62,174 nucleotides of DNA. Source: Octopus bimaculoides. Taxonomy: Eukaryota. Shown piece by piece: positions 7,132 through 59,507 of the stretch. Under the pieces are notes generated by a model, which saw nothing but the letters and a program-made list of their open reading frames with translations, was not told where the DNA came from and did no database searches. The stretch is taken from the NCBI RefSeq assembly GCF_001194135.2, contig NC_068986.1:101645200-101707373 (forward strand), given 5' to 3'. The translations under genes were made by a program, and so were the position numbers. The first letter of the stretch is position 1; each line of letters starts with the position of its first letter.

Positions 7132-7930
7132 TACACTGAACTACAAAAGAAACGTCGTTCTGTAAAAGATTATTTGTTCCACACACAATATTGAGATTAT
7201 ATGGATTTCTTTCCCATTTCTAGATAATTTAAAAACAGAAAGATGTCACTGATCCACAAAACCACTCTCTGAGGAAAACACAAAGATTGCATGTATGGTT
7301 CGAACTCGCTCGCTTCGTGAACGTGGTAATGCTCGCGAACGTATCTTTATGAAAAGCATGATGCACATGCAAAACGTTGGCTCATTGGGTATAAAAGGCA
7401 TCGACGGTCAACATCCTTGGATCATTGCTAATAACTTGAACTGCAGTATTCGGGCAATTAAGCGATTAAGGGAACGATACAATGCCACAGACAGCACGGA
7501 TGATCGTCTCCGAAGTGACCGACGGAGGGTTACAACGGCACGTCAAAATCGTCACCTACACCGACAGCACTTGAAGCACCGATTCCGGAGGGTAACGGAA
7601 TTAGCTAGGCAGACCATAAGGACTCACCTCAGACCCATTTGTGCAGATACAGTTCGCCGCCGGTTGAGATCCTTCAATTTGTCTTATATATATGATGGAG
7701 GCGATATATGCGTTCGACAGAGACAGCGTTCTATCGGCCTGTTTCTTGATGTAACTTTTAGATATCTGAGCAAACCGTTTAACATAACTGTTTTACAAGG
7801 CTACTTATATCTAAATTACAATGTACAAAACTTGATATGATACACTTGCTCTTCTGACGGAGTACCGACACGATTGGACATGCATTCCGCCAGAATTGTG
7901 CAATAACCTCGCGCTAGTTCATGCGGGCTA
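7132..7930 (+). mobile_element. Degenerate Tc1/mariner DNA transposon with transposase N-terminal HTH remnant, internally deleted
   Basis: 7424-7681 translates IANNLNCSIRAIKRLRERYNATDSTDDRLRSDRRRVTTARQNR...TVRRRLRSFNL, matching the Tc1 pattern (HTH, GRPR-like linker, second HTH ending TVRRRL). Possible C-terminal remnant DWTCIPPELCNNL near 7870-7910 and possible left end TACACTGAAC at 7132. No DDE core or right TIR seen. Confidence 0.8.
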
Positions 7931-11959: not shown

Positions 11960-12901
11960 CATGCATTTATATATTTACATATTTTGCGAATTTATATTGA
12001 AAAAAAAATGCACTTTAGGGAATATTGCAAAATATGTCAACTAGTATTGAAATATAGTTGCAATATATTCTTTGATTATTTATAAAGAAAGATGATTTAT
12101 GGTTGGAATATTTTCGATCTATGATCAAAGATGTTCCAGCCGCAACCGATTCTCGTTTCAGTCAGCTCCATTAAAACTGACCTTGGAAAACAATCAAGAA
12201 TATTAACCAATCATTAAAACCAACTGTATCCCACACGCAGATAAAACAGCCGCAAGAAAAACTATTACTTTAACTACTACTACTACTACTGCTGCAATAG
12301 TCACAGCATTATACATATTACACCAGAAACACATTATCAATAGCATCAAGCAAAGAGCTAAATTACCAGTGACATCTTCATCACTATCAATATAGTCTCA
12401 TTACCAAAAACATCAAAAGCAGTAGTTTTGCAGACGATGTGGAAGATAACAGTTATCGTCATCACCATTTTCGACAGCAACAAATATCAAAGAATTACAG
12501 TTTCTTTCATCTTCGACAACAGCAAACCAAACTTTGTGTGGTCGTTTGAATCGTTTTGATATAATTAGTGGAGACCTCACTAAAATAAAAACAATAAGAA
12601 AATGTTTAAAATAAAAATTTTGAAAAGCATGAGGTGCACTGTATTCTCAAATGAGACGGGATGGGCAAAGCTGGAAAGCATTCGACCTTACGTCAGCTCG
12701 ATGAGGACACAGTGGAACTAAACAACAACGAGACAATAGTAATAGATGTCGTTACAATAGCTTTCGCAATAACAATAGCTACACGGATTTCATTTAGAAA
12801 CTTCGAAATGCTGATATGGAAATACAAGGTATGTGTAAGAAAAAAAAAAAATGAATTATATTTAATAGAAACATTATCATTATTTATGTAGATTCTTTGG
12901 A

Positions 12902-14764: not shown

Positions 14765-15615
14765 NNNNNNNNNNGTGTGTGTGTGTATGTGTGTGTGTGT
14801 GTGTGTTCCAATATGAAATAGAAGCAGCATTAGTGTAACAGACATTATCGACCACATATACTTAACGTATATGCATAGTCTATTTGCCGGTAAGCTATTA
14901 TCTGGCGTGGGAAAGAATACGCTCTCAAAGCACCAGGTGTTAAAATATCTGAAGAACATGGACAGACGAGATAACCCGTCCATCACTCCTAAGTGTGATT
15001 AATGCCGGGATATCTCACCTGCCCATGACTTTCACGTGTTGTAACAACCTGCACTTTGATTGATTATTTTCCGCCAGTCCAAATCTCAGCCTACCGGTAA
15101 ATATATATGCGTTTCCTAATGAGATTATATATATATATACACACACACAAACAAACAGTGGAAGTGACGAATGTGCTTGTGCTTTACAGACAACAAAGTA
15201 ATGTTCAAACGCAGTACAGGAGAGAAAGACTGGGTATTTACCTTTATAATACGCACGAAAATAAGTTGCCAGCTGGTAGCTACGGGAGTCGAACCTGTAC
15301 CCTTCAAATTCCGGTTGAGTGCTCTACTATTAAACTAAACGGCTTCTGACAAAAATGACCATTAATATTAATTCTGCATTACAACTTCCCGAATACAATA
15401 TTTCATAAAGAAATGTTTGAAGCGTCGAATATATCGGTGTCTTACACACAAGGAAGTAAATATCGAACGTAGTATAGATGTAAGAACGACAAAGAAAGAT
15501 TGGGGATTTACCCAAAATAAGACAAAGAAATGTTGCGAAAAGGAATCTACGGGTGTCGAAACCTAACCCTTAGATAACAGGTGATTGCTCTATCATTCAG
15601 CTGCATGTATAAGCA

Positions 15616-15770
15616 ACGGGCTTCTTTCACATTCCGTATATCAAATCCACTCACAAGGTTTTGGTTCGCCCTCCCTTTTAGCAAAAGACATTTGCCAAAG
15701 ATGTTACGCGATGGGACTGATCTCGGAAACATGTGGTTTGGAAGCAAGCTTCCTACCAGAGATCCACTCC
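15616..15770 (-). mobile_element. SINE family C, 5' half
   Basis: ACGGGCTTCTTTCAC.TTCCGT...AAATCCACTCACAAGG...GGGACTGA...CATGTGGTTTGGAAGCAAGCTT matches other C copies. Confidence 0.85.
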
Positions 15771-15796
15771 CCTCTCTTTCACATACATACATACAT

Positions 15797-15828
15797 TTAT
15801 ATATATATATATATATNNNNNNNNNNAC

Positions 15829-15900
<72 letters not shown>
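15797..15900. repeat. Compound (TA)n/(CA)n/(TA)n microsatellite with 10-N gap
   Basis: Direct reading. Confidence 0.95.
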
Positions 15901-15905
<5 letters not shown>

Positions 15906-16540
15906 GGAATACATAAAATGGGACAAGAACTGAAAACATCCAGACAGCTAGATGATACAAAAAAAGAATATGAAAAAAAATGAACAGGTGATTCGAAGTT
16001 ATCTTTCCTCCGTCGAGTTCCAGATTATCTTTGCACTTTCGGCTGTTTCTACTCGAGATTGCTCCAATCTTGCCCGCCCCATGTTAAAACTAATCTAATA
16101 TATTAAACAACATTTGTGCCTAAGGTCTCGTGCAAAAGCAACTATCAAACTACGGTGGCAGCGCAAGTTACACTCTGGTATCAAAGGGCCAATTTTCCTA
16201 ACCCCAAAATACTTTCTTTCACTAATATTTAAGAGAACATACATTTGGTATGTTTCTCTGTGTGCATCTTCATATGTATACCAAACTAGTTGAGACATAG
16301 GTACAAAGTTAATTGCAGAATAAAACCGTTAGGTCATCGAATCAAAAAGCCGTAGCCTACCAATGACCACAGATAAGATGTACAACATAGACCACAAAAC
16401 CAAATTAGTAAAAGGAAGTTAAAATTTTTAAACATAAGAATAAAAATCGATTAAAAATACAATAGAATAATATAAATAAATAAACTGCGATTAAAAAGTT
16501 GATTAAAATATTAGAGACCGGTACAAATACAGTAGAATAA

Positions 16541-16580: not shown

Positions 16581-16643
16581 TATAGAGAAAAAAATAATAC
16601 ATATGGGAACGTAGCACAACAGTTCATTCGCTGAGGCCAATAG
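16581..16643 (-). repeat. Left arm of inverted repeat pair (partner 19274-19337)
   Basis: Reverse complement CTATTGGCCTCAGCGAATGAACTGTTGTGCTACGTTCCCATATGTATTA...CTCTATA differs from the partner by 3 substitutions and 1 indel; (TA)n lies just outside. Confidence 0.92.
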
Positions 16644-18900
16644 GGAAGACCTCGAGAGCTTCGTTGCCAGGCTGCCACGCCTATCGGGGCCGGATGCGGA
16701 GGCTTGTGAGGGACCGATCACGACTAAGGAGATAATCGAGGCGTTGGCGAAATGTGGGAGGGACAAATCGCCGGGACTCAATGGCCTACCCTATGGGTAG
16801 GACCATCCAGGATAATCTCCACCTTATACGCTATACCATAGAGAGGTTTGGGGCTAAGACTGACATAGGGAGGGGGGGCTTTGGTGCATTTAGACCAAGC
16901 TAAGGCTTTCGATAGGGTCGACCAGCGATACCTGGTGAGTGTTCTTGCGGGGTTTGGCTTGCGCCTCGGTTTCTTCAGATGGATCATTCAGTTGTACCAT
17001 AACATCGACTCGATAGTTGGGGTGAACGGTTTTCTTTCTAAGCCGTTCTGCATCAAGCGTTCGGTTCGTCAAGGGTCTCCACTCTCTCCGCTTTTGTACG
17101 TGGTGGCTCTCGACCCGCTGCTGAGAAAGCTGAGAGAGATCCCGAGAGCGCCGGGCTTGGAGGAGTTTGTTACAGCGTATGCGGACGACATCACCATCAG
17201 CGTGACCTCAACGACACGCTTGCGTAAAGTAGAAGAGGTTGTTGAGGAGTACGACACGGTGGCAGGAGCAAAGATTAATCGGGATAAGTCAGTCGGCTAG
17301 CAACTCGGCACCTGGAGGGGCAAATCGATGCCTTCGGATAGCGTCGTAGGACGCTGGACGGAGGTACCGGTTAAGTTGCTGGGGGTTTGGTTCGGTCCAG
17401 ACCTCCAGGTGGAGAAGAACTGGGCAGAGGTATCGAGCAAGATAGCCAGCATAGCCAAGAGATGGTCTTGGCGAAGGCTATCATTGAAAGGGAGGGCGGA
17501 GGTAGCCAATGTGTTTATCGCATCGGTGATTACCTACCGCCTGACCGTCGTGCCCTGCCCTGATTCGTGCTTGACCAAGTTGGAAAGACAGCTCTTTCAC
17601 TTTTTGTGGAGGGGTTCGAAGCCACTTGTTAGACGCTCTATCAGTTGTCAGAAAGCGTTAAAAGGAGGTTTAGGGATGCCTTGNNNNNNNNNNNNNNNNN
17701 NNNNNNNNNNNNNNNNNNNNNNNNNNNNNNNNNNNNNNNNNNNNNNNNNNNNNNNNNNNNNNNNNNNNNNNNNNNNNNNNNNNNNNNNNNNNNNNNNNNN
17801 NNNNNNNNNNNNNNNNNNNNNNNNNNNNNNNNNNNNNNNNNNNNNNNNNNNNNNNNNNNNNNNNNNNNNNNNNNNNNNNNNNNNNNNNNNNNNNNNNNNN
17901 NNNNNNNNNNNNNNNNNNNNNNNNNNNNNNNNNNNNNNNNNNNNNNNNNNNNNNNNNNNNNNNNNNNNNNNNNNNNNNNNNNNNNNNNNNNNNNNNNNNN
18001 NNNNNNNNNNNNNNNNNNNNNNNNNNNNNNNNNNNNNNNNNNNNNNNNNNNNNNNNNNNNNNNNNNNNNNNNNNNNNNNNNNNNNNNNNNNNNNNNNNNN
18101 NNNNNNNNNNNNNNNNNNNNNNNNNNNNNNNNNNNNNNNNNNNNNNNNNNNNNNNNNNNNNNNNNNNNNNNNNNNNNNNNNNNNNNNNNNNNNNNNNNNN
18201 NNNNNNNNNNNNNNNNNNNNNNNNNNNNNNNNNNNNNNNNNNNNNNNNNNNNNNNNNNNNNNNNNNNNNNNNNNNNNNNNNNNNNNNNNNNNNNNNNNNN
18301 NNNNNNNNNNNNNNNNNNNNNNNNNNNNNNNNNNNNNNNNNNNNNNNNNNNNNNNNNNNGCCGAGTCAATCATAAAAATTGACCCGCCAAGTTTGTTATC
18401 AAACGAAGGTAAGAAATGTTTCCTCGTTACATTACAATAGCAGTAGCGAAAGAGGTAGTGTGGAAGACTAGAACGGAAGAAATCAAGACAGTCACTTTTA
18501 TCTCCAGCCAAAACATGGTAAGATATTTTTCTTTTCATTTGAAAAGAAAGATACGGCTGGAGAGAAAGTGTTTGTCGGAGAAAGTGTTTCGATCTAGATG
18601 GAAACATGTCACACGAGAGTTTCGAGTGAAAGAGAGCAATTGAATACGCCATAAGTGTCTTCAAAAGTGTCAGTGGTGGGATGGAGCTCGTGGGGTCGGA
18701 GCGAAACCCAGTCCCCCAATTCATTGTTCTATGTGCGTTTTTGTTTTTGTATACCATTCGATTTAAACCGATTTTCATTGTAATTTTTTATTGCTAAATT
18801 TTTTATTTTACGTCGATTTTATTGTGTAACCATATTTTTATTTGACCCCAAATCAGATGTATTGTCCCTTCTATGTTTCGCCCCTTGTGGGTAATAAAGA
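16644..18900 (+). mobile_element. 5'-truncated L1-superclade (Tx1-like) non-LTR retrotransposon: disrupted ORF2 RT and C-terminus plus 3' UTR
   Basis: Motifs EGPITTKEIIEAL..CGRDKSPGLNGLPY, GRTIQDNLHLIRY, LDQAKAFDRVD, VRQGSPLSPLLY, AYADD, LLGVWFG, GGLGMP. Lesions: deletion junction at 16795/16796, +1 frameshift in the G7 run near 16872, TAG at 17298-17300, frameshift near 18430. 676-N gap at 17684-18359. ORF ends TGA 18641-18643; tail ends GTAATAAAGA at 18900. Tx1 subclade is from recalled motif style and less certain than L1-like RT. Confidence 0.9.
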
Positions 18901-18944
18901 GATCAATTTTTTTGACTAGTGACTTCGCTGATGTGTGTCTTTTT

Positions 18945-20560: not shown

Positions 20561-20816
20561 AAGCGGCGAGCTAGCAGAATTGCGAGCACACCAGGCAAAA
20601 TGCTTAGCTGCATTTCACTCGTCCTTAGGTTGTAGGTTCAAATTCCGCCCAGGACGAGTTTGCTTTTCATCCTATCGGAGTCGGTTCAATAAATAACATT
20701 GAAGCACTGGGGACGATGAAATAAATACCACTGAAACACTGAGGTCGATGTAATCGACTGGTCCCCCACACCTCAAATTTCAGGCCTTGTGCCTTAAATA
20801 GAAAGGATTATTATTA
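20561..20816 (+). mobile_element. SINE family B, near full length, with internal duplication
   Basis: tRNA-like head with A-box-like TAGCAGAATTG and B-box-like GTTCAAATTCC; duplicated CACTG(G/A)GG(A/T)CGATG module; tail CAGGCCTTGTGCC...GAAAGGATTATTATT; ATT/ATC-rich flanks on both sides. Confidence 0.88.
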
Positions 20817-34825: not shown

Positions 34826-35649
34826 TTGGGAACAGGCAGAATAAAGCGTCGGGAGAGTTTGTTATAGCTATCATGTTAATCCTCAATGTACTGTTTCTTG
34901 ATTCGCATTAGGTAAATTACCCCTTACTGGGACGCCCCGTTTAGTATTGTTCATACGCTGTCAATTAACAAAAGTGTTTTTTTTCTCTCCCGTTCTTTCT
35001 ATAAATTGCCCTTGTGGGGTTCACCTGTTACCCTTTTTGGGTGACTGGTAATGCAATATTGGGACACATTACATCACCAGAAACTTTTCTGTAGTGTTAT
35101 ATGGTTGACTGGTAGATTGCTAGAATGTTAATGTTTCGGAAAAATGCCTACCGGGATTTTTTCAGCTCTTAAATTGTCTTCCAAACCCTGTTGTGATATA
35201 GTTTGCTTTTCAACCCTTCGGGGTCTATAAAAGAAAAAGGACCAGTCAAAAAGTGAGGTCGGTAATATCGGCCCCTAAACTGCTCACTCAAAATTACTGG
35301 CTTCGAGCTTAAATGCAAATGCCATTGTACGGTGCCGAAATAGCAGAATCGTTTAAGCGCTGGAGAAAAAAAAAAATCTTTACGTCCTGACTTCAAATCC
35401 TGCTGTGGTTAACTTTCAAATACATCACTGCAGAGTCTATTAAGTACAAATCGTGTACTTTAAATAATGATATCAGCTAAATCCCTCCCTAAATCAGAAA
35501 CAAATACTATCATCAGAACCAGTATTCTTAATATCAGTACTGGTTGAAAATTTTGACACCAGGCCAGTAATTTCAGAAGAGGAGGTAGGGCCATTAGATT
35601 GGTCCCAGCGCTCATCTAGAACTTGTTTCATTGACCAGAAAGAATAAAA

Positions 35650-45287: not shown

Positions 45288-46996
45288 ACAAAATGAATGT
45301 GTATATTTAGGTAAAAATCGGCAGTTGTACACTTTGTTTTACGAAACATCTGTTTGTAGACGCATTGTGTTAAATATGAAAAAAAAAAACAATATAATTT
45401 AGTGCTAGACATATGAAATGAGAGATAAGTATTTCACCGTTGTTTCGGCTTATCATTCCCACTTACACATGTCACTTCCGAAGCAAAAACCTAGTCTGAA
45501 GTACACTACTGATAGTGTTTAAACTATTCATTGATTTGCAAAGGCATCGCAAGAACAAAGCAAATTCGAATTATGCAATGGAAGCAGTTTTATGGTTAAA
45601 TATCTATCGATAGTTGAGTACGTTTAAAAAGAGTAAAACTTGTTTTCTTCAGGGAAAATTTCCTGTCTTCAGGAAAATTTCCCTTCACAAAAGACAATGA
45701 GCTTCAGAGCTCTGAAGTATATCATATTTTCACGATTAAAAAGGAAAGGAAAAAAAAAGGAATTCGGGCGTTTTAAGATCTTACACGAGGCAAATTGCTA
45801 AGTACAATACTTAGTGACGTTACTTGTTCCTATAACTCAAACTAAGATATTATTAGAAATCCGATCATAGCTAACCTGAATTAAGATTAATTAATTAAGA
45901 TTAATTAACTAAATACATGGATTATATTTTAAAATTTCACTTCCCCATTTATTGCTTTTTCCTATGTATTAGCTCTAAGAACCTCGTTTCCAACCATATT
46001 GAATTTCAACCTAATTTCCAACCGTTGCTTATATTTCTCACAAATATAATAACGTGATGTATCCTTTCTGTAGAATATATTTCATATATACAATTCTTAG
46101 AATATATTCTTTTGAATAAATTGTATTTAATGCAATTTTATTCAAAGTCCGCAAAACAGAATCTCACTGATATTACAAATAGGCTATGGGGTTACTGCGT
46201 ATTTTGGGGGTTTTGATGCGGTGATTTGTACTTTAAGACCTCACTGAGATATTAAATTTGACATTAAACTGTCAACTGCGTTTATTTTCTTCATGTACAT
46301 ATCAATTTAGCCCAGTCTGACAAAGATTTATATTTGAAATTATATAGAGAGCAAAAAACTATGTGAAGAAATTTGATATATCTCTACTTTCAGCTATAAA
46401 TCCTCAGTATCTTGAATGGAGCATGAAATGAAATACATACTTTAAGAGCTTTAGGAAGTATAGTTCGTGAAAATAACCGATGAATTAAAAGAACAATTAA
46501 AACTTCAAACCGTTGTGTATCATAGATTCAGATCGTTGATTAATATGAAACATGCGAAAACAAATAAAAAAAACAACTTCATGTAGGGGCGTAGACAGTT
46601 TCTAAATTTAGTGGAAATGAGCACGTAAAAAAGGCGACGTGATGCATACCAAACAATTTTCACCTCATTCATTTTATAAAAGGCATCTTTTTTTTTTCAA
46701 ATGTGCTCGCAGGGAACGGTCACCCCCCACCCTGATATACTATTAGCTACGCTATTGATTGGTTGACCATAGTTCATCATTCTTTATTTCTTTGCTGATA
46801 CACACCTGGATTAATTCACGCAAATACGAATTAATGATAGGATTCGGATTTGCACCTATCACCTTTCCCTCGGATTAACAACCTATACGGATTAGTATAA
46901 TATTGACTGGACATTTTGTTAGCGTTTACGGGGCTATTATTCTGGATTTATTAAATCCTCTACTATTTACACACAAACAGACTCACACAGATTTCA

Positions 46997-47350
46997 TCTT
47001 TCACTTGTTTCACTCATTGGACTGCAGCCATGCTGGAGCACTGCCTTACAATATTTTAGTCGAACAAATCAACTCAGTGCCTATTTCTAAAGTAGTTATT
47101 CTGGTGGTCATTCTATCACTCTCTTTTGCCGAACAGTTAAGTTATGGAGACATACAAACCATCACCTGCACGCACGCACACACACGCACACACATTTCTT
47201 TTAGTCTCCGTCTATCAAATCCACTCACAAGGCTTTGGTTGGCCCGAGGCTATAGTAGAAGACACCTGGACAAGGTGCCACGCAGTGGGACTGAACCCGG
47301 AACCATGTGGTTCGTAAGCAAGCTACTTACCACACAATCACTCCTACGCG
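46997..47350 (-). mobile_element. SINE family C, near full length
   Basis: Reverse complement of 43942-44318; well-preserved CTATAGTAGAAGACACCTGGACAAGGTGCCACGCAGTGGGACTGAACCCGGAACCATGTGG; the minus-strand CCTTGTCCAGGTGTCTTCT segment is CORE-like. Confidence 0.92.
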
Positions 47351-47553
47351 TATATGTATGAATTATGTTAATGCAACGTAGAACTACAATGAAACGATTG
47401 GATGCAAAGTGCACATTATACTTTGTTGAAGTTCATCCAAAATCGGTTGATTCTGGACAGATCCCCGTTATACTTAGTAGCGAAAATTTGATAGTTTTAA
47501 ATAAGAAATATAATCTACTGAAATATTTATTTGCTGTAGAATACATGTGTGGA

Positions 47554-51891: not shown

Positions 51892-52276
51892 CTAGATATC
51901 TAGGTTTGAGTCTGCAAGGTGTTTCGCTATACGCTATTCAGCTCGCATCAAGAACTGTTTTGCTGATTTTTATATTCAAGAACTCATGCACTTGTTAGCT
52001 TCAATGGTCCCACGGTGTACGTTTAAGCAAGAAAACAGAGAACATAGTTGAAACATCGGGATGTATCGAAATCCCTTTACACGGGTGAATCTCAAGCACA
52101 CATCGTTTAAGTAGAAGTGTTCTATGTGGACGGAAAACAGCAGCGATTAATATACACGTTCGAATCTGCCATGTTCTGCAAACAAAACATGGCAGATTCG
52201 AATGTGTATATTGAACGTACCAAAAATGAAGATACGTTATTTTTACATTCTCGCTGCTTTGAAATCATTCTACAAA

Positions 52277-52452
52277 TTATTCTTTGTTACTCTAGGCACA
52301 TTTCGGGGGAAGGAGCCAGTCGATTACATCGACCCCAGTCTTCAATTTATCGAGCCCGGAAGGATCAAAGCAAAGTCGACTTCGGCGGAATTTGAACTCA
52401 GAACGTAAAGACAGACGAAATATCGCTAAGCATTTCGCCCGGTGTGCTAATG
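52277..52452 (-). mobile_element. SINE family B lacking its first ~19 nt (recipient copy)
   Basis: Minus strand starts CATTAGCACACCGGGCGAAATGCTTAGCGATATTTCGTC directly after the tail of the upper copy and ends in the normal B tail. Confidence 0.88.
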
Positions 52453-52693
52453 TTTCTTATTTCTTTATTACCCACAAGGGGCTAAACATAGAGGGGACAA
52501 ACAAGGACAGACAAAGAGATTAAGCCAATTACATCGACCCCAGTGCGTAACTGGTACTTAATTTATCGACCCCGAAAGGATGAAAAGCAAAGTCGACCTC
52601 GGCGGAATTTCAACTCAGAACAGTTCAAACACAGACAAAATGCAGCTAAGCATTGCGTCCGGCCTGCTAACGTTTCTGCAAGCTCGCCGCCTT
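52453..52693 (-). mobile_element. SINE family B variant with a Tx1-LINE-derived 3' tail
   Basis: Minus strand: B head and body to CTGGGGTCGATGTAATT, a linker, then TTGTCCCCTCTATGTTTAGCCCCTTGTGGGTAATAAAGA (52500-52462; 37/39 identical to LINE end 18862-18900) and AATAAGAAA. Confidence 0.9.
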
Positions 52694-53171
52694 CATTCGG
52701 CAAATTATTAACTTTCGATTTAGCTCCGTTTCATCTCACAAGGTTGAGCAAGGAAATTACACGTCTTTATTCAAGCTACCCTGCACTAAAATGCAAGGAT
52801 CATTCAAATTATTCTTTCCGCAAGAAATCCAATAAGCTCGTAACATTTCCGAGATTATCATCTCTCTTACGTGACAATGCATTCTATATTTACATGATGT
52901 CATTTAATTAAAATGTTGAGAGTGTTTCGGGCTGCATATTTTTGTTATTAGAATTTCGAGTGAAGGAAATAACTCTACTCGTTACAACAGTGAAAATCTT
53001 TTATTTACTTTCGTTCAGTGCGTTAAATGCGTTAACAATATTTTACTGTTGTTTAGATAAAATATGAACATTGTGTCTATTTTTTCCGTGATTTTCTCGT
53101 TGATAATATTAGAGAGAGTTTACACACACGCACACACATATATACACGCATAAACCCCCTCTCAAACACAA

Positions 53172-55290: not shown

Positions 55291-55743
55291 CGAACGAGCG
55301 ACAGAATAATGGCTCATTCGTTTGCTTCCAAGCCTTCTTTATATTGTTATTATAACTGTAATTGTCTGTACATATTCTAGTCGGATTGCTCATGTTGTTT
55401 GAATTGTTTAGCAAGAGATCATCCTTGATTCAGTAATGCCAGGAATATTACATTTATTTCTGTTTTCTTAACGGTATGGTATATCTATGATTGTATTAAA
55501 TACTTGTTTATGAATCATGCGAAAGACAAGTGGTTGAGATCTTAGTGGGATTTGGCAGCTATTCCTAGCCAGCCAATTATCTGCATAAATGCTTCCTCGT
55601 CATTTTGATCTCCATTGTTGTCATTTTTGTTCTTGTTGTTCTTTAGCCACAGATCACCTGTACTGGTCAAAACGGTTTTTCATCGCTATGAAATGGCCTT
55701 ACAAGGACCATTTTATTTAGTAGAAAGGATTATAAATGTTGCT

Positions 55744-56182
55744 GATGGGGTAAACTGGCAAAATGATTGCAGCAACGGACAAAAGGCTTAGTGGTGTTTA
55801 TTCCGGTTTTACATTCTGTGCTCAATTCTGCAAAGGTCGATTTCGCTTTACATCCTTTCGAAGCCGATAAAATAAGTGTCCGTTCACTGATATCCTTCCC
55901 CACGTTTTTCTGGCGCTGACTTGACTGATATCCTTGCCAACATTTTTCTGGCCTTGTGTCAACAGAACAAAGGATAATTAAGGATGTTGAGGGTAGTGGG
56001 CGAAATTCTTTGCGGCATTTCCTCTGGCTTTATGCCCTGAGTACAGTCTCTGCGTGGTCGACTTTGACATACATCTTTTAGGGGTCGATGAAATAAGTAC
56101 CAGTGGAACTCCGAGGTTGTTATAATAGATTAGCCCCGCCTTCCTCAATGTATCGAATCCTGTGCGTATGATAGAAAGGATT
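55744..56182 (+). mobile_element. Two head-to-tail degraded SINE family B copies
   Basis: 55744-55978 and 55985-56182 each contain GGTCGA(T/C)TT...CATC.TTT...GATAAAATAAGT or GATGAAATAAGT and end in AAAGGAT(A/T)AT; the first has an internal ~29 bp duplication. Confidence 0.7.
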
Positions 56183-56332
56183 ATTGTGCTACAGCATATT
56201 TTCCCTTGCTTAATGTCAGGCCCAGTTAATAGAATTTATTGTATTTGTTTGTTGAATAAGTTTCTATTCGAACAGCAAGTATTCATTATTCAGTATAAAC
56301 AGTGTCGCTACCTACCAGAGAACCACAAGGGT

Positions 56333-58490: not shown

Positions 58491-58547
58491 GAATTATATA
58501 TATCGTAATAAGAAATTAGGACAGTGTGAGATTGGTACATTACTTTC

Positions 58548-58755
58548 TTTTACTGTTTTACTTATTTCAGTCATTTGACTGCGGCCATGCTACAGCACCG
58601 CCGTTAGTCGAGCAAATCGACCCAGTACGTATTGTTTGTAATCCTAGTACTTATTCTATCCGTCTCTTTGGCCGATCCGCTAAGTTATGGGGACGTAAAC
58701 ACAACAACATCGGTTGTCAAGCGATGTTAGTGTGGGGTCAAACACAGACACACAA

Positions 58756-58791
<36 letters not shown>

Positions 58792-58798
58792 CCCCCAC

Positions 58799-58833
<35 letters not shown>

Positions 58834-58990
58834 TATATACGACGGGTTTCTTTCAGTTTCCGTCCACCAAATCCACTCAATGCTTTGGTCGGCCAGAGGC
58901 TATAGTAGAAGACACTTGCCCAAAGTGCCACCCTGTGGGACTGAAACCAGAACCATGTGGCTACGTACCACACATCCACTCCTACGCCTA
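58548..58990 (-). mobile_element. SINE family C, full length, with expanded central (CA)n/(TA)n
   Basis: All C modules present, including GTCGAGCAAATCGACCC and CCGTCCACCAAATCCACTCA...GGCTATAGTAGAAGACACTTGCCC; central microsatellite about 58746-58838. Confidence 0.93.
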
Positions 58991-59507
58991 GTTCATTTCT
59001 CCAGAAGTATAAAAGGCAGAATTAAATTCGAGGTGATTTGAACACGGAATAGAAAGGCATGTGACTAAATATTGCAAGACATTTCTCCACATGTTATAAA
59101 ACCCAGCAACGAACCACAAATATACACGCTGTTGTTGTAAATGTTCATCCTGGCATTATACGTTTATTTAGAAACAATATATAATAGATGCAGTTATAAT
59201 AATTTATTATGTGATCCTAATTACTACTCCCTAAATGTTTCTAATTATATTTCAATTTATTTAAGTGTTTTAGACAATGTCGATATTATAGTATTTGTGT
59301 TATAACTTCGGCAGTTGAGGTTTGTGTTATTTCTGCCGCTATACTTCATGGCTATGTATTTGGCCTTGCTGTTTTAATTGTTTCTGCTGCTATTGCTAAA
59401 GATATTGATGCGCTTTTACTCACTGTTGTTTCAAATACTTCTTAAAATGGTTTATTGCCGTTCTACATGTTTACATTAGTAGGGATAATGCTATTATTTA
59501 TTTACTG

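What the first reader, a model, noticed from the sequence alone, without database searches (positions are those of the whole stretch)
52277..52693. SINE carrying the 3' tail of the window's own Tx1-like LINE, inserted inside the head of its own family
Seen: on the minus strand, a family-B SINE ends not in the usual B tail but in 39 nt that are 37/39 identical to the last 39 nt of the LINE (18862-18900), plus AATAAGAAA. It is joined directly to a second B body starting CATTAGCAC, the position where the B head normally reads GCAGAAA|CGTTAGC; there is only one 5' head for two bodies, and the tail end AGAAA matches the target. Established: SINEs that share a 3' end with a LINE are mobilised by it, and many Tx1-clade LINEs are sequence-specific for multicopy small-RNA or repeat targets. 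Inference: a B-derived passenger that uses Tx1 machinery to insert at a fixed site in family-B heads would generate head-to-tail arrays and act as a parasite of a parasite. Caveat: the LINE copy here is itself not flanked by B sequence.
Basis: partly seen in the sequence, partly recalled or inferred. Interest (0 to 1): 0.8.

Follow-up and report, generated by a model that had tools for sequence, protein, structure and literature searches.

The report
SINE dimer with a LINE-derived tail
Two copies of a common short retrotransposon sit head-to-tail inside one insertion, and the first has swapped its usual 3' end for that of a LINE found elsewhere in the window; this is an ordinary by-product of LINE-driven retrotransposition, and nothing here shows it targets its own family.

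Summary
On the minus strand a full-length family-B SINE (52692-52516) loses the usual B tail at about B position 184. It ends instead in about 56 nt derived from the 3' end of the window's LINE: 37/39 identical to 18862-18900, or 43/46 with one gap to 18855-18903, and including a 10-nt tandem duplication. It abuts a second B copy that lacks the first 15-20 nt, across a 6-nt microhomology (AGAAAC).

The site-specific "parasite of a parasite" reading has no support:
- The whole dimer is bracketed by a single 17-nt target-site duplication (15/17).
- The only LINE copy is not in a B head.
- None of about 18 other B copies has such an insertion or tail.
- Two other B-B head-to-tail abutments in the window have ordinary B tails (3 abutments seen, 0.02-0.06 expected).

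Best reading: a B SINE with a LINE-derived 3' module (a subfamily member or a one-off chimera), concatenated with a 5'-truncated B by RT template jumping or tail/homology-directed insertion. The genome-wide count that would separate a family from a one-off could not be run, because no searchable collection holds this genome. This is a known kind of thing and of low interest.

The parts
52693..52709 (-). 5' copy of the target-site duplication, AATAATTTGCCGAATGA, immediately upstream of the single B head
   Evidence: It matches the 3' copy at 15/17. It was the best ungapped match between the 40-nt and 61-nt flanks; 0.3% of 1000 shuffles scored as high.
52516..52692 (-). Unit 1: family-B SINE head and body, B consensus positions 1 to about 184, 87% identical to the window consensus
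   Evidence: (nhmmer E = 9e-37).
52495..52514 (-). 10-nt tandem duplication (TTGTCTGTCC TTGTTTGTCC) at the B/LINE-module boundary. The second copy is part of the LINE match.
   Evidence: TRF: period 10, 2 copies, 90% matches.
52459..52503 (-). LINE-derived 3' module of unit 1, replacing the last ~34 nt of the canonical B tail
52453..52458 (-). Junction microhomology AAGAAA(C). It can be read either as the A-rich end of unit 1's tail or as B head positions 15-20 of unit 2.
52282..52452 (-). Unit 2: 5'-truncated B SINE starting at consensus position 15-21. It has a canonical B tail with an internal ~10-nt deletion and is 82% identical to the consensus.
   Evidence: (E = 2.5e-33).
52265..52281 (-). 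3' copy of the target-site duplication, AATAATTTGTAGAATGA. Its first bases overlap what could be the end of unit 2's tail.
16600..18903 (+). Degenerate, 5'-truncated L1/Tx1-type LINE copy: RT with frameshifts, stops, an internal deletion and a 676-N gap. Its 3' end (18855-18903) is the source type of unit 1's tail.
   Evidence: (RVT_1 homologues, best 49-66% aa). A related LINE 3' end in L135 stops at a similar GGG(C/T)AAT(G/A)AA motif.

Best explanation
The locus is a two-unit, head-to-tail concatemer of family-B SINEs lying within a single target-site duplication. B has a weakly tRNA-like head. Unit 1 is a full-length B whose last ~34 nt were replaced by the terminal ~46 nt of an L1/Tx1-type LINE, plus a 10-nt duplication. 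That is a B variant carrying the 3' recognition end of that LINE, and it arose by RT template switching or recombination between LINE and B RNAs or copies. Unit 2 is an ordinary B truncated 15-20 nt into its head. The two were joined by a process that is not site-specific. One option is a single retrotransposition in which the RT, copying a canonical B RNA, jumped at a 6-nt microhomology (AGAAAC) onto the A-rich 3' end of a B-with-LINE-tail RNA. The other is one B inserting at or into another, with priming or resolution helped by tail or head homology.

Shown: the anatomy, the tail identity, the single TSD pair, the microhomology, and the excess of B-B abutments. Inferred: the order of events, and that unit 1's tail made it a substrate of this LINE.
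For: Tail identity 37/39 and 43/46, found at only two sites in the window. B identity of both units. TSD 15/17 exactly bracketing the composite; 0.3% of shuffles scored as high. Other B copies have TSDs of similar size, for example 12898: TTTATGTAGATTCTTT against TTTATATAGATTCCTT. The junction shares AGAAAC with the head. Three same-orientation abutments (gap 5 nt or less) occur among 20 B copies, against 0.02 expected; none of 20000 random placements reached 3. The other two (35138-35328/35332-35490 and 55745-55978/55983-56184) have canonical tails on the upstream unit. Exchange of modules between SINEs and LINEs by RT template switching or recombination is described as a standard route of SINE diversification (PMC4758252; PMC4494074). 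Octopus genomes, if this is one, carry hundreds of SINE families and recently active L1-Tx1 families (PMC13282606).
Against: Only one B-plus-LINE-tail copy is visible. So it is unknown whether unit 1 represents an amplifying subfamily or a one-off chimera, and whether the LINE ever mobilised it. A single locus cannot separate template jump, tail-targeted insertion and homology-resolved nested insertion. The downstream unit of a second pair (55983-) may start at a similar head position (somewhere in 16-30; the alignment is unreliable there). That is a weak hint of a preferred breakpoint.
Confidence: 0.72

Rival explanations
1. A B-derived passenger with the LINE tail is inserted by sequence-specific Tx1-type machinery at a fixed site (GCAGAAA|CGTTAGC) in B heads. 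The head here belongs to unit 2, and the inserted element is headless.
For: The tail is shared with the LINE. AGAAA is present at both sides of the putative insertion. Many Tx1-clade LINEs are target-specific, and Tx1-mobilised SINEs that insert specifically into another transposon are known: SINEU/Tx1-Mar into Mariner-N4_AMi (PMC4494074). A second pair may break in a similar head region.
Against: The LINE copy is not in B sequence. None of the other B heads in the window is occupied. The inserted element would have to be 5'-truncated at exactly the base where it inserted. Head-to-tail B pairs form without the LINE tail. Tx1 clade membership is untested. The sample size is one.
Confidence: 0.06
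2. There is no chimeric SINE RNA. A severely 5'-truncated copy of the LINE itself (its last ~56 nt) inserted into the tail of the upstream unit of a pre-existing B-B concatemer, and the remaining ~34 nt of that tail were deleted.
For: LINE insertions are commonly heavily 5'-truncated and can delete target DNA (general knowledge of L1-type TPRT). B-B concatemers with canonical tails exist nearby.
Against: There is no TSD around the 56-nt segment. It also requires a deletion ending exactly at the start of unit 2, so it needs more events than a tail-swapped SINE.
Confidence: 0.1
3. A DNA-level rearrangement after insertion, or an assembly artefact of this gapped draft. The rearrangement could be unequal crossing-over, non-allelic recombination or gene conversion among the dense local B copies.
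For: B copies are dense: about 20 in 62 kb, in clusters. The assembly has 10 N-gaps. One B copy (20563-20812) has an internal duplication.
Against: The two units are only ~78-84% identical to each other, so this is not a recent local duplication. The junctions share at most 6 nt, too little for a k-mer assembly chimera. Recombination does not explain the LINE tail.
Confidence: 0.08

Closest known systems
SINE/LINE pairs with a common 3' tail (Ohshima and Okada model; Kajikawa and Okada 2002, as cited in PMC4494074 and PMC4758252)
   Same: A SINE with a Pol III-type head whose last ~46 nt match the 3' end of a LINE in the same genome (43/46), and which is flanked by TSDs.
   Different: Only one tail-bearing copy is seen. 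The rest of the family uses a different tail. Mobilisation by this LINE is inferred, not shown.
Modular 'jigsaw' SINEs of molluscs and HCD-SINEs with multiple LINE partners (PMC4758252; PMC11481361)
   Same: The same head and body combined with alternative 3' modules. [quoted passage not shown]
   Different: Those are defined as families from many copies. Here the variant is a single copy in 62 kb.
Chimeric retrocopies made by RT template switching (Buzdin et al. 2002; Garcia-Perez et al. 2007, as cited in PMC4494074)
   Same: Two RNA-derived parts in the same orientation, a 5'-truncated 3' part, no TSD between them, one TSD pair around the whole, and microhomology at the joint.
   Different: Both parts here are SINEs of one family rather than snRNA plus L1/Alu. 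A sequential-insertion origin is not excluded.
SINEU / Tx1-Mar in crocodilians, and Tx1L in Tx1D (PMC4494074)
   Different: In SINEU-3, 77 of 88 copies are flanked by the target at least on one side, and the partner LINEs share that target. Here the LINE copy is not in the proposed target and there is a single junction.

Membership tests
LINE-dependent SINE sharing its partner's 3' tail | The 3' end is near-identical to the 3' end of a LINE in the same genome | tested here: met
   37/39 and 43/46 to 18855-18903. Only two occurrences in the window, 0 expected.
LINE-dependent SINE sharing its partner's 3' tail | Pol III-type (tRNA-derived) head with A and B boxes | tested here: inconclusive
   ARAGORN finds a weak tRNA-like fold at consensus positions 11-90, but only at a relaxed threshold. 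Rfam tRNA does not hit the copies. A B-box-like GTTCAAATTCC is visible by eye.
LINE-dependent SINE sharing its partner's 3' tail | Flanked by target-site duplications | tested here: met
   A 17-nt TSD, 15/17, but around the two-unit composite rather than around unit 1 alone.
LINE-dependent SINE sharing its partner's 3' tail | Many dispersed copies with the same body/tail junction (a family, not a one-off) | not testable with these tools
   One copy in the window. The metagenome, prokaryote-genome and viral collections hold no true copy. The protein collection lacks this LINE family and has no B-derived ORFs.
Target-specific Tx1-clade LINE/SINE system | RT falls in the Tx1 clade in a phylogeny with reference elements | not testable with these tools
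   Only RVT_1 homology is shown, with endonuclease and zf-RVT in relatives. No labelled reference set was available.
Target-specific Tx1-clade LINE/SINE system | A large fraction of copies (more than 20% in Kojima 2015) are flanked by the same target sequence at the same position | tested here: not met
   The single LINE copy has non-B flanks. One of two tail-bearing sequences abuts B. None of about 18 other B heads is occupied. The sample is very small.
Template-switch chimeric retrocopy / SINE concatemer | Same-orientation parts, a 5'-truncated downstream part, no internal TSD, and a single outer TSD | tested here: met
CORE-SINE superfamily | Central domain homologous to the CORE (MIR-type) domain | tested here: inconclusive
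   A local resemblance (TTTCATCC…GGGGTCGATAAAATAAGTACC against MIR TTTCCTCATC…GGGGATAATAATAGTACC) was seen using a MIR consensus recalled from memory. The alignment score was not above shuffles (p = 0.38).

The most novel reading that the evidence does not exclude
A B-derived subfamily carrying this LINE's tail integrates preferentially at the acceptor/D-arm junction of B heads (position ~15-21), or at B tails. It is guided by the LINE endonuclease or by annealing of its A-rich 3' end to AGAA(A/T)C. It therefore builds head-to-tail B arrays, a SINE that parasitises its own family.
Probability: 0.06. Interest if true: 0.6.

Novelty: new member of a known kind. Interest (0 to 1): 0.2.

Why it matters
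As it stands, this is a textbook illustration of how SINEs change LINE partners and how RT template jumps or tail-directed insertion make SINE concatemers. It is useful for annotating this genome's repeats but not surprising. It would matter only if a genome-wide survey showed recurrent, position-specific insertion of tail-bearing B elements into B heads. That would add a self-targeting SINE to the short list of target-specific SINE/LINE systems. The significant excess of head-to-tail B abutments is a modest lead on the partner LINE's target or priming preference. It is also cheap to test.

Tried and rejected
1. Exact-pattern scans for the LINE tail in metagenome and viral contigs found nothing.
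2. Scans for the B core 18-mer in metagenome and prokaryote-genome contigs gave 131 loci. None aligns to B beyond the seed, so all are chance hits.
3. Protein route to related DNA. The RT fragment finds only relatives at 66% aa or less. The C-terminal fragment finds one relative at 52%. A B-antisense ORF peptide finds no candidate. Window ORFs are not in the collection. The contigs fetched (L001, L002, L003, L135) contain no B SINE. So this genome and close relatives are not in the searchable collections.
4. Idea that the canonical B tail (GGCCTTGTGCC) and the LINE tail (CCCCTTGTGGG) are homologous hairpins. The alignment score is not above shuffles (p = 0.22). The predicted folds are no more stable than shuffles (z = -0.05 to -0.5). 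Dropped.
5. CORE-SINE membership by alignment to a remembered MIR consensus was not significant.
6. Rfam at permissive E-value on the locus gave no tRNA or other credible hit.
7. Relative age of the units from identity to the consensus (87% against 82%): the difference is within sampling error, so it does not order the events.
8. No TSD was found for the LINE copy.

Full report
**What is at the coordinates**

Read on the minus strand, the region consists of the following, in order:
- a flank ending in AATAATTTGCCGAATGA (52709-52693);
- a B-family head, GGCGGCGAGCTTGCAGAAACGTTAGC (52691-52666);
- a B body down to …GGGGTCGATGTAATTGGCTTAATCTC (52516);
- then TTTGTCTGTCCTTGTTTGTCCCCTCTATGTTTAGCCCCTTGTGGGTAATAAAGAAATAAGAAA (to 52453);
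- directly afterwards CATTAGCACACCGGGCGAAATGC…, a second B body, ending in a shortened canonical B tail (…CCCCCGAAATGTGCCTAGAGTAACAAAG, 52282);
- then AATAATTTGTAGAATGA (52281-52265).

**The B family in the window**

I collected B copies by BLASTN and nhmmer and built a 218-nt working consensus. About 20 copies or fragments are present in 62 kb.
- Unit 1 aligns to consensus positions 1-174 (about 184 by eye) at 87% identity.
- Unit 2 aligns to positions 15-213 at 82%.
- The canonical tail is …CCCCTCCCCCAAAATTGCTGGCCTTGTGCCTAAATTAGAAAGGATTATT. It is present or recognisable in the other assessable copies.
- ARAGORN at a relaxed threshold finds a weak tRNA-like fold at consensus positions 11-90. 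Rfam does not call the copies as tRNA.

**The LINE tail**

- With one gap the match is 43/46, 52503-52459 against 18855-18903.
- The 29-nt core is found only at these two sites, with 0 expected.
- The ~12 nt between the B body and the match is not foreign. TRF reports a 10-nt tandem duplication at 52495-52514, which reads TTGTCTGTCC/TTGTTTGTCC on the minus strand and duplicates the LINE-derived TTGTCC motif.

So unit 1 is B(1 to ~184) plus the terminal ~46 nt of the LINE, with a small duplication. It replaces the last ~34 nt of the B tail.

**The LINE**

- The copy at about 16600-18903 (+) is 5'-truncated and degenerate. It has frameshifts, stops, an internal deletion and a 676-N gap.
- Its RT finds RVT_1 proteins. 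The best full-length hits are ~49% identical, short fragments reach 66%, and the best named hit is a cuttlefish protein.
- Relatives have an Exo_endo_phos endonuclease upstream and a zf-RVT domain. This is an L1/Tx1-type architecture.
- Clade assignment to Tx1 could not be tested.
- A related LINE 3' end (L135, from a Logan contig) stops being alignable at a similar GGG(C/T)AAT(G/A)AA motif. That gives modest support for 18900±3 as the true 3' terminus.
- The LINE's flanks are not B sequence, and no TSD is evident.

**The junction and the flanks**

- The tail end AAGAAAC is identical to head positions 15-20 (GCAGAAAC). The unit 1/unit 2 boundary is therefore ambiguous over 6 nt, which is a microhomology.
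- The composite is bracketed exactly by a 17-nt direct repeat with two adjacent mismatches. It was the best ungapped match between the two flanks, and 0.3% of 1000 shuffles scored as high.
- TSDs of similar size flank other B copies, for example at 12898.

The whole dimer therefore sits within one retrotransposition footprint.

B copies abut head-to-tail far more often than chance. Three same-orientation pairs have gaps of 5 nt or less, against 0.02 expected. None of 20000 random placements reached three. The other two pairs are:
- 35138-35328 / 35332-35490, where the downstream unit is full-length;
- 55745-55978 / 55983-56184, where the downstream unit is 5'-truncated somewhere in positions 16-30. 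This pair is preceded by a tail-only B fragment at 55691-55734.

Both have canonical B tails on the upstream unit. Concatenation is therefore a property of the B family or its partner machinery in general, and not of the LINE-tail variant.

**Interpretation**

'One head, two bodies' is the normal appearance of a full-length unit followed by a 5'-truncated unit. Three routes give exactly this structure without any site specificity:
1. The RT copies a canonical B RNA and jumps, at the AGAAAC microhomology, onto the 3' end of a B-with-LINE-tail RNA. The result is a single TSD pair.
2. One B inserts into or next to another, with homology-assisted priming or resolution.
3. A 5'-truncated B inserts into the A-rich tail of unit 1. 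The sequence after unit 2 (GTAACAAAGAATAA) resembles both the canonical tail end and unit 1's tail end, so this cannot be excluded.

A single locus cannot separate these three routes.

The window offers no support for any of them.
- The LINE copy is not in B sequence.
- None of about 18 other B heads is occupied.
- There are no other tail-bearing copies.

**Comparison with known systems**

- Shared 3' tails between SINEs and partner LINEs are standard, as is module exchange by RT template switching or recombination (PMC4758252; PMC4494074; PMC11481361).
- Target-specific Tx1 LINEs and a Tx1-mobilised SINE inserting specifically into another transposon are already described: SINEU/Tx1-Mar into Mariner-N4_AMi, and Tx1L into Tx1D.
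- If the window is from an octopus, which is not proven, such genomes are reported to hold 11.6% SINEs. Among recently active elements, about 900 SINE families and 13 L1-Tx1 families are listed (PMC13282606). One more tail variant is then unremarkable.

**What could not be done**

The decisive count, B-attached against LINE-attached tails and their 3' flanks genome-wide, needs the source genome. All accessible collections were negative or irrelevant.

Ideas tested and dropped:
- homology between the canonical B tail and the LINE tail (p = 0.22);
- a conserved stable 3' hairpin (z about 0);
- CORE-SINE membership (p = 0.38, using a remembered reference).

**Verdict**

- The 'site-specific insertion into its own family's head' part is not supported. 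My estimate for it is about 6%.
- This is a new member of a known kind, and of low interest.

Noticed in passing
window 35138-35490 (+), 55691-56184 (+), 52282-52692 (-): Family-B SINEs abut head-to-tail much more often than chance: 3 pairs with a gap of 5 nt or less against 0.02 expected. The 55.7-kb array is a tail-only fragment, then a full unit, then a 5'-truncated unit. This suggests RT template jumping between B RNAs, or insertion directed at B tails.
   Followed up: partly
window 20563-20812 (+): This B copy has an internal duplication of consensus positions ~116-161.
   Followed up: no
window 15578-15913 (+), 46879-47358 (+), 58520-59038 (+): A second repeat family recurs next to (AC)n/(TA)n microsatellites. 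It shares the translated signature …SNPLTR.W…RRHL.K…GT…MW. It is probably another SINE family.
   Followed up: no
window 15274-15344 (-): The only Rfam hit at gathering threshold is tRNA (31.7 bits), and ARAGORN does not call it. It may be a tRNA pseudogene or the head of another SINE.
   Followed up: no
window 7253-7837 (+): A 195-aa open frame rich in basic residues (…RAIKRLRERYNATDSTDDRLRSDRRRVTTARQNRHL…) resembles the N-terminal HTH region of a Tc1/mariner transposase. This is by eye only.
   Followed up: no
L135 2400-2452 (Logan SRR11869385) against window 18868-18903: A related LINE (52% aa in the C-terminal region) ends in …GGCGGTCCCTAGAGGGCAATGAAAAC. The short CCC-NNNN-GGG plus AAT(A/G)AA arrangement matches that of the window LINE, but the fold is not significant.
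   Followed up: partly
P0085 (protein collection): One of the closer relatives of this animal LINE (63% aa) is deposited as a 'zinc-binding domain-containing protein' of a Herbaspirillum MAG on a 1.8-kb contig. This is probably host DNA contaminating a bacterial bin.
   Followed up: no
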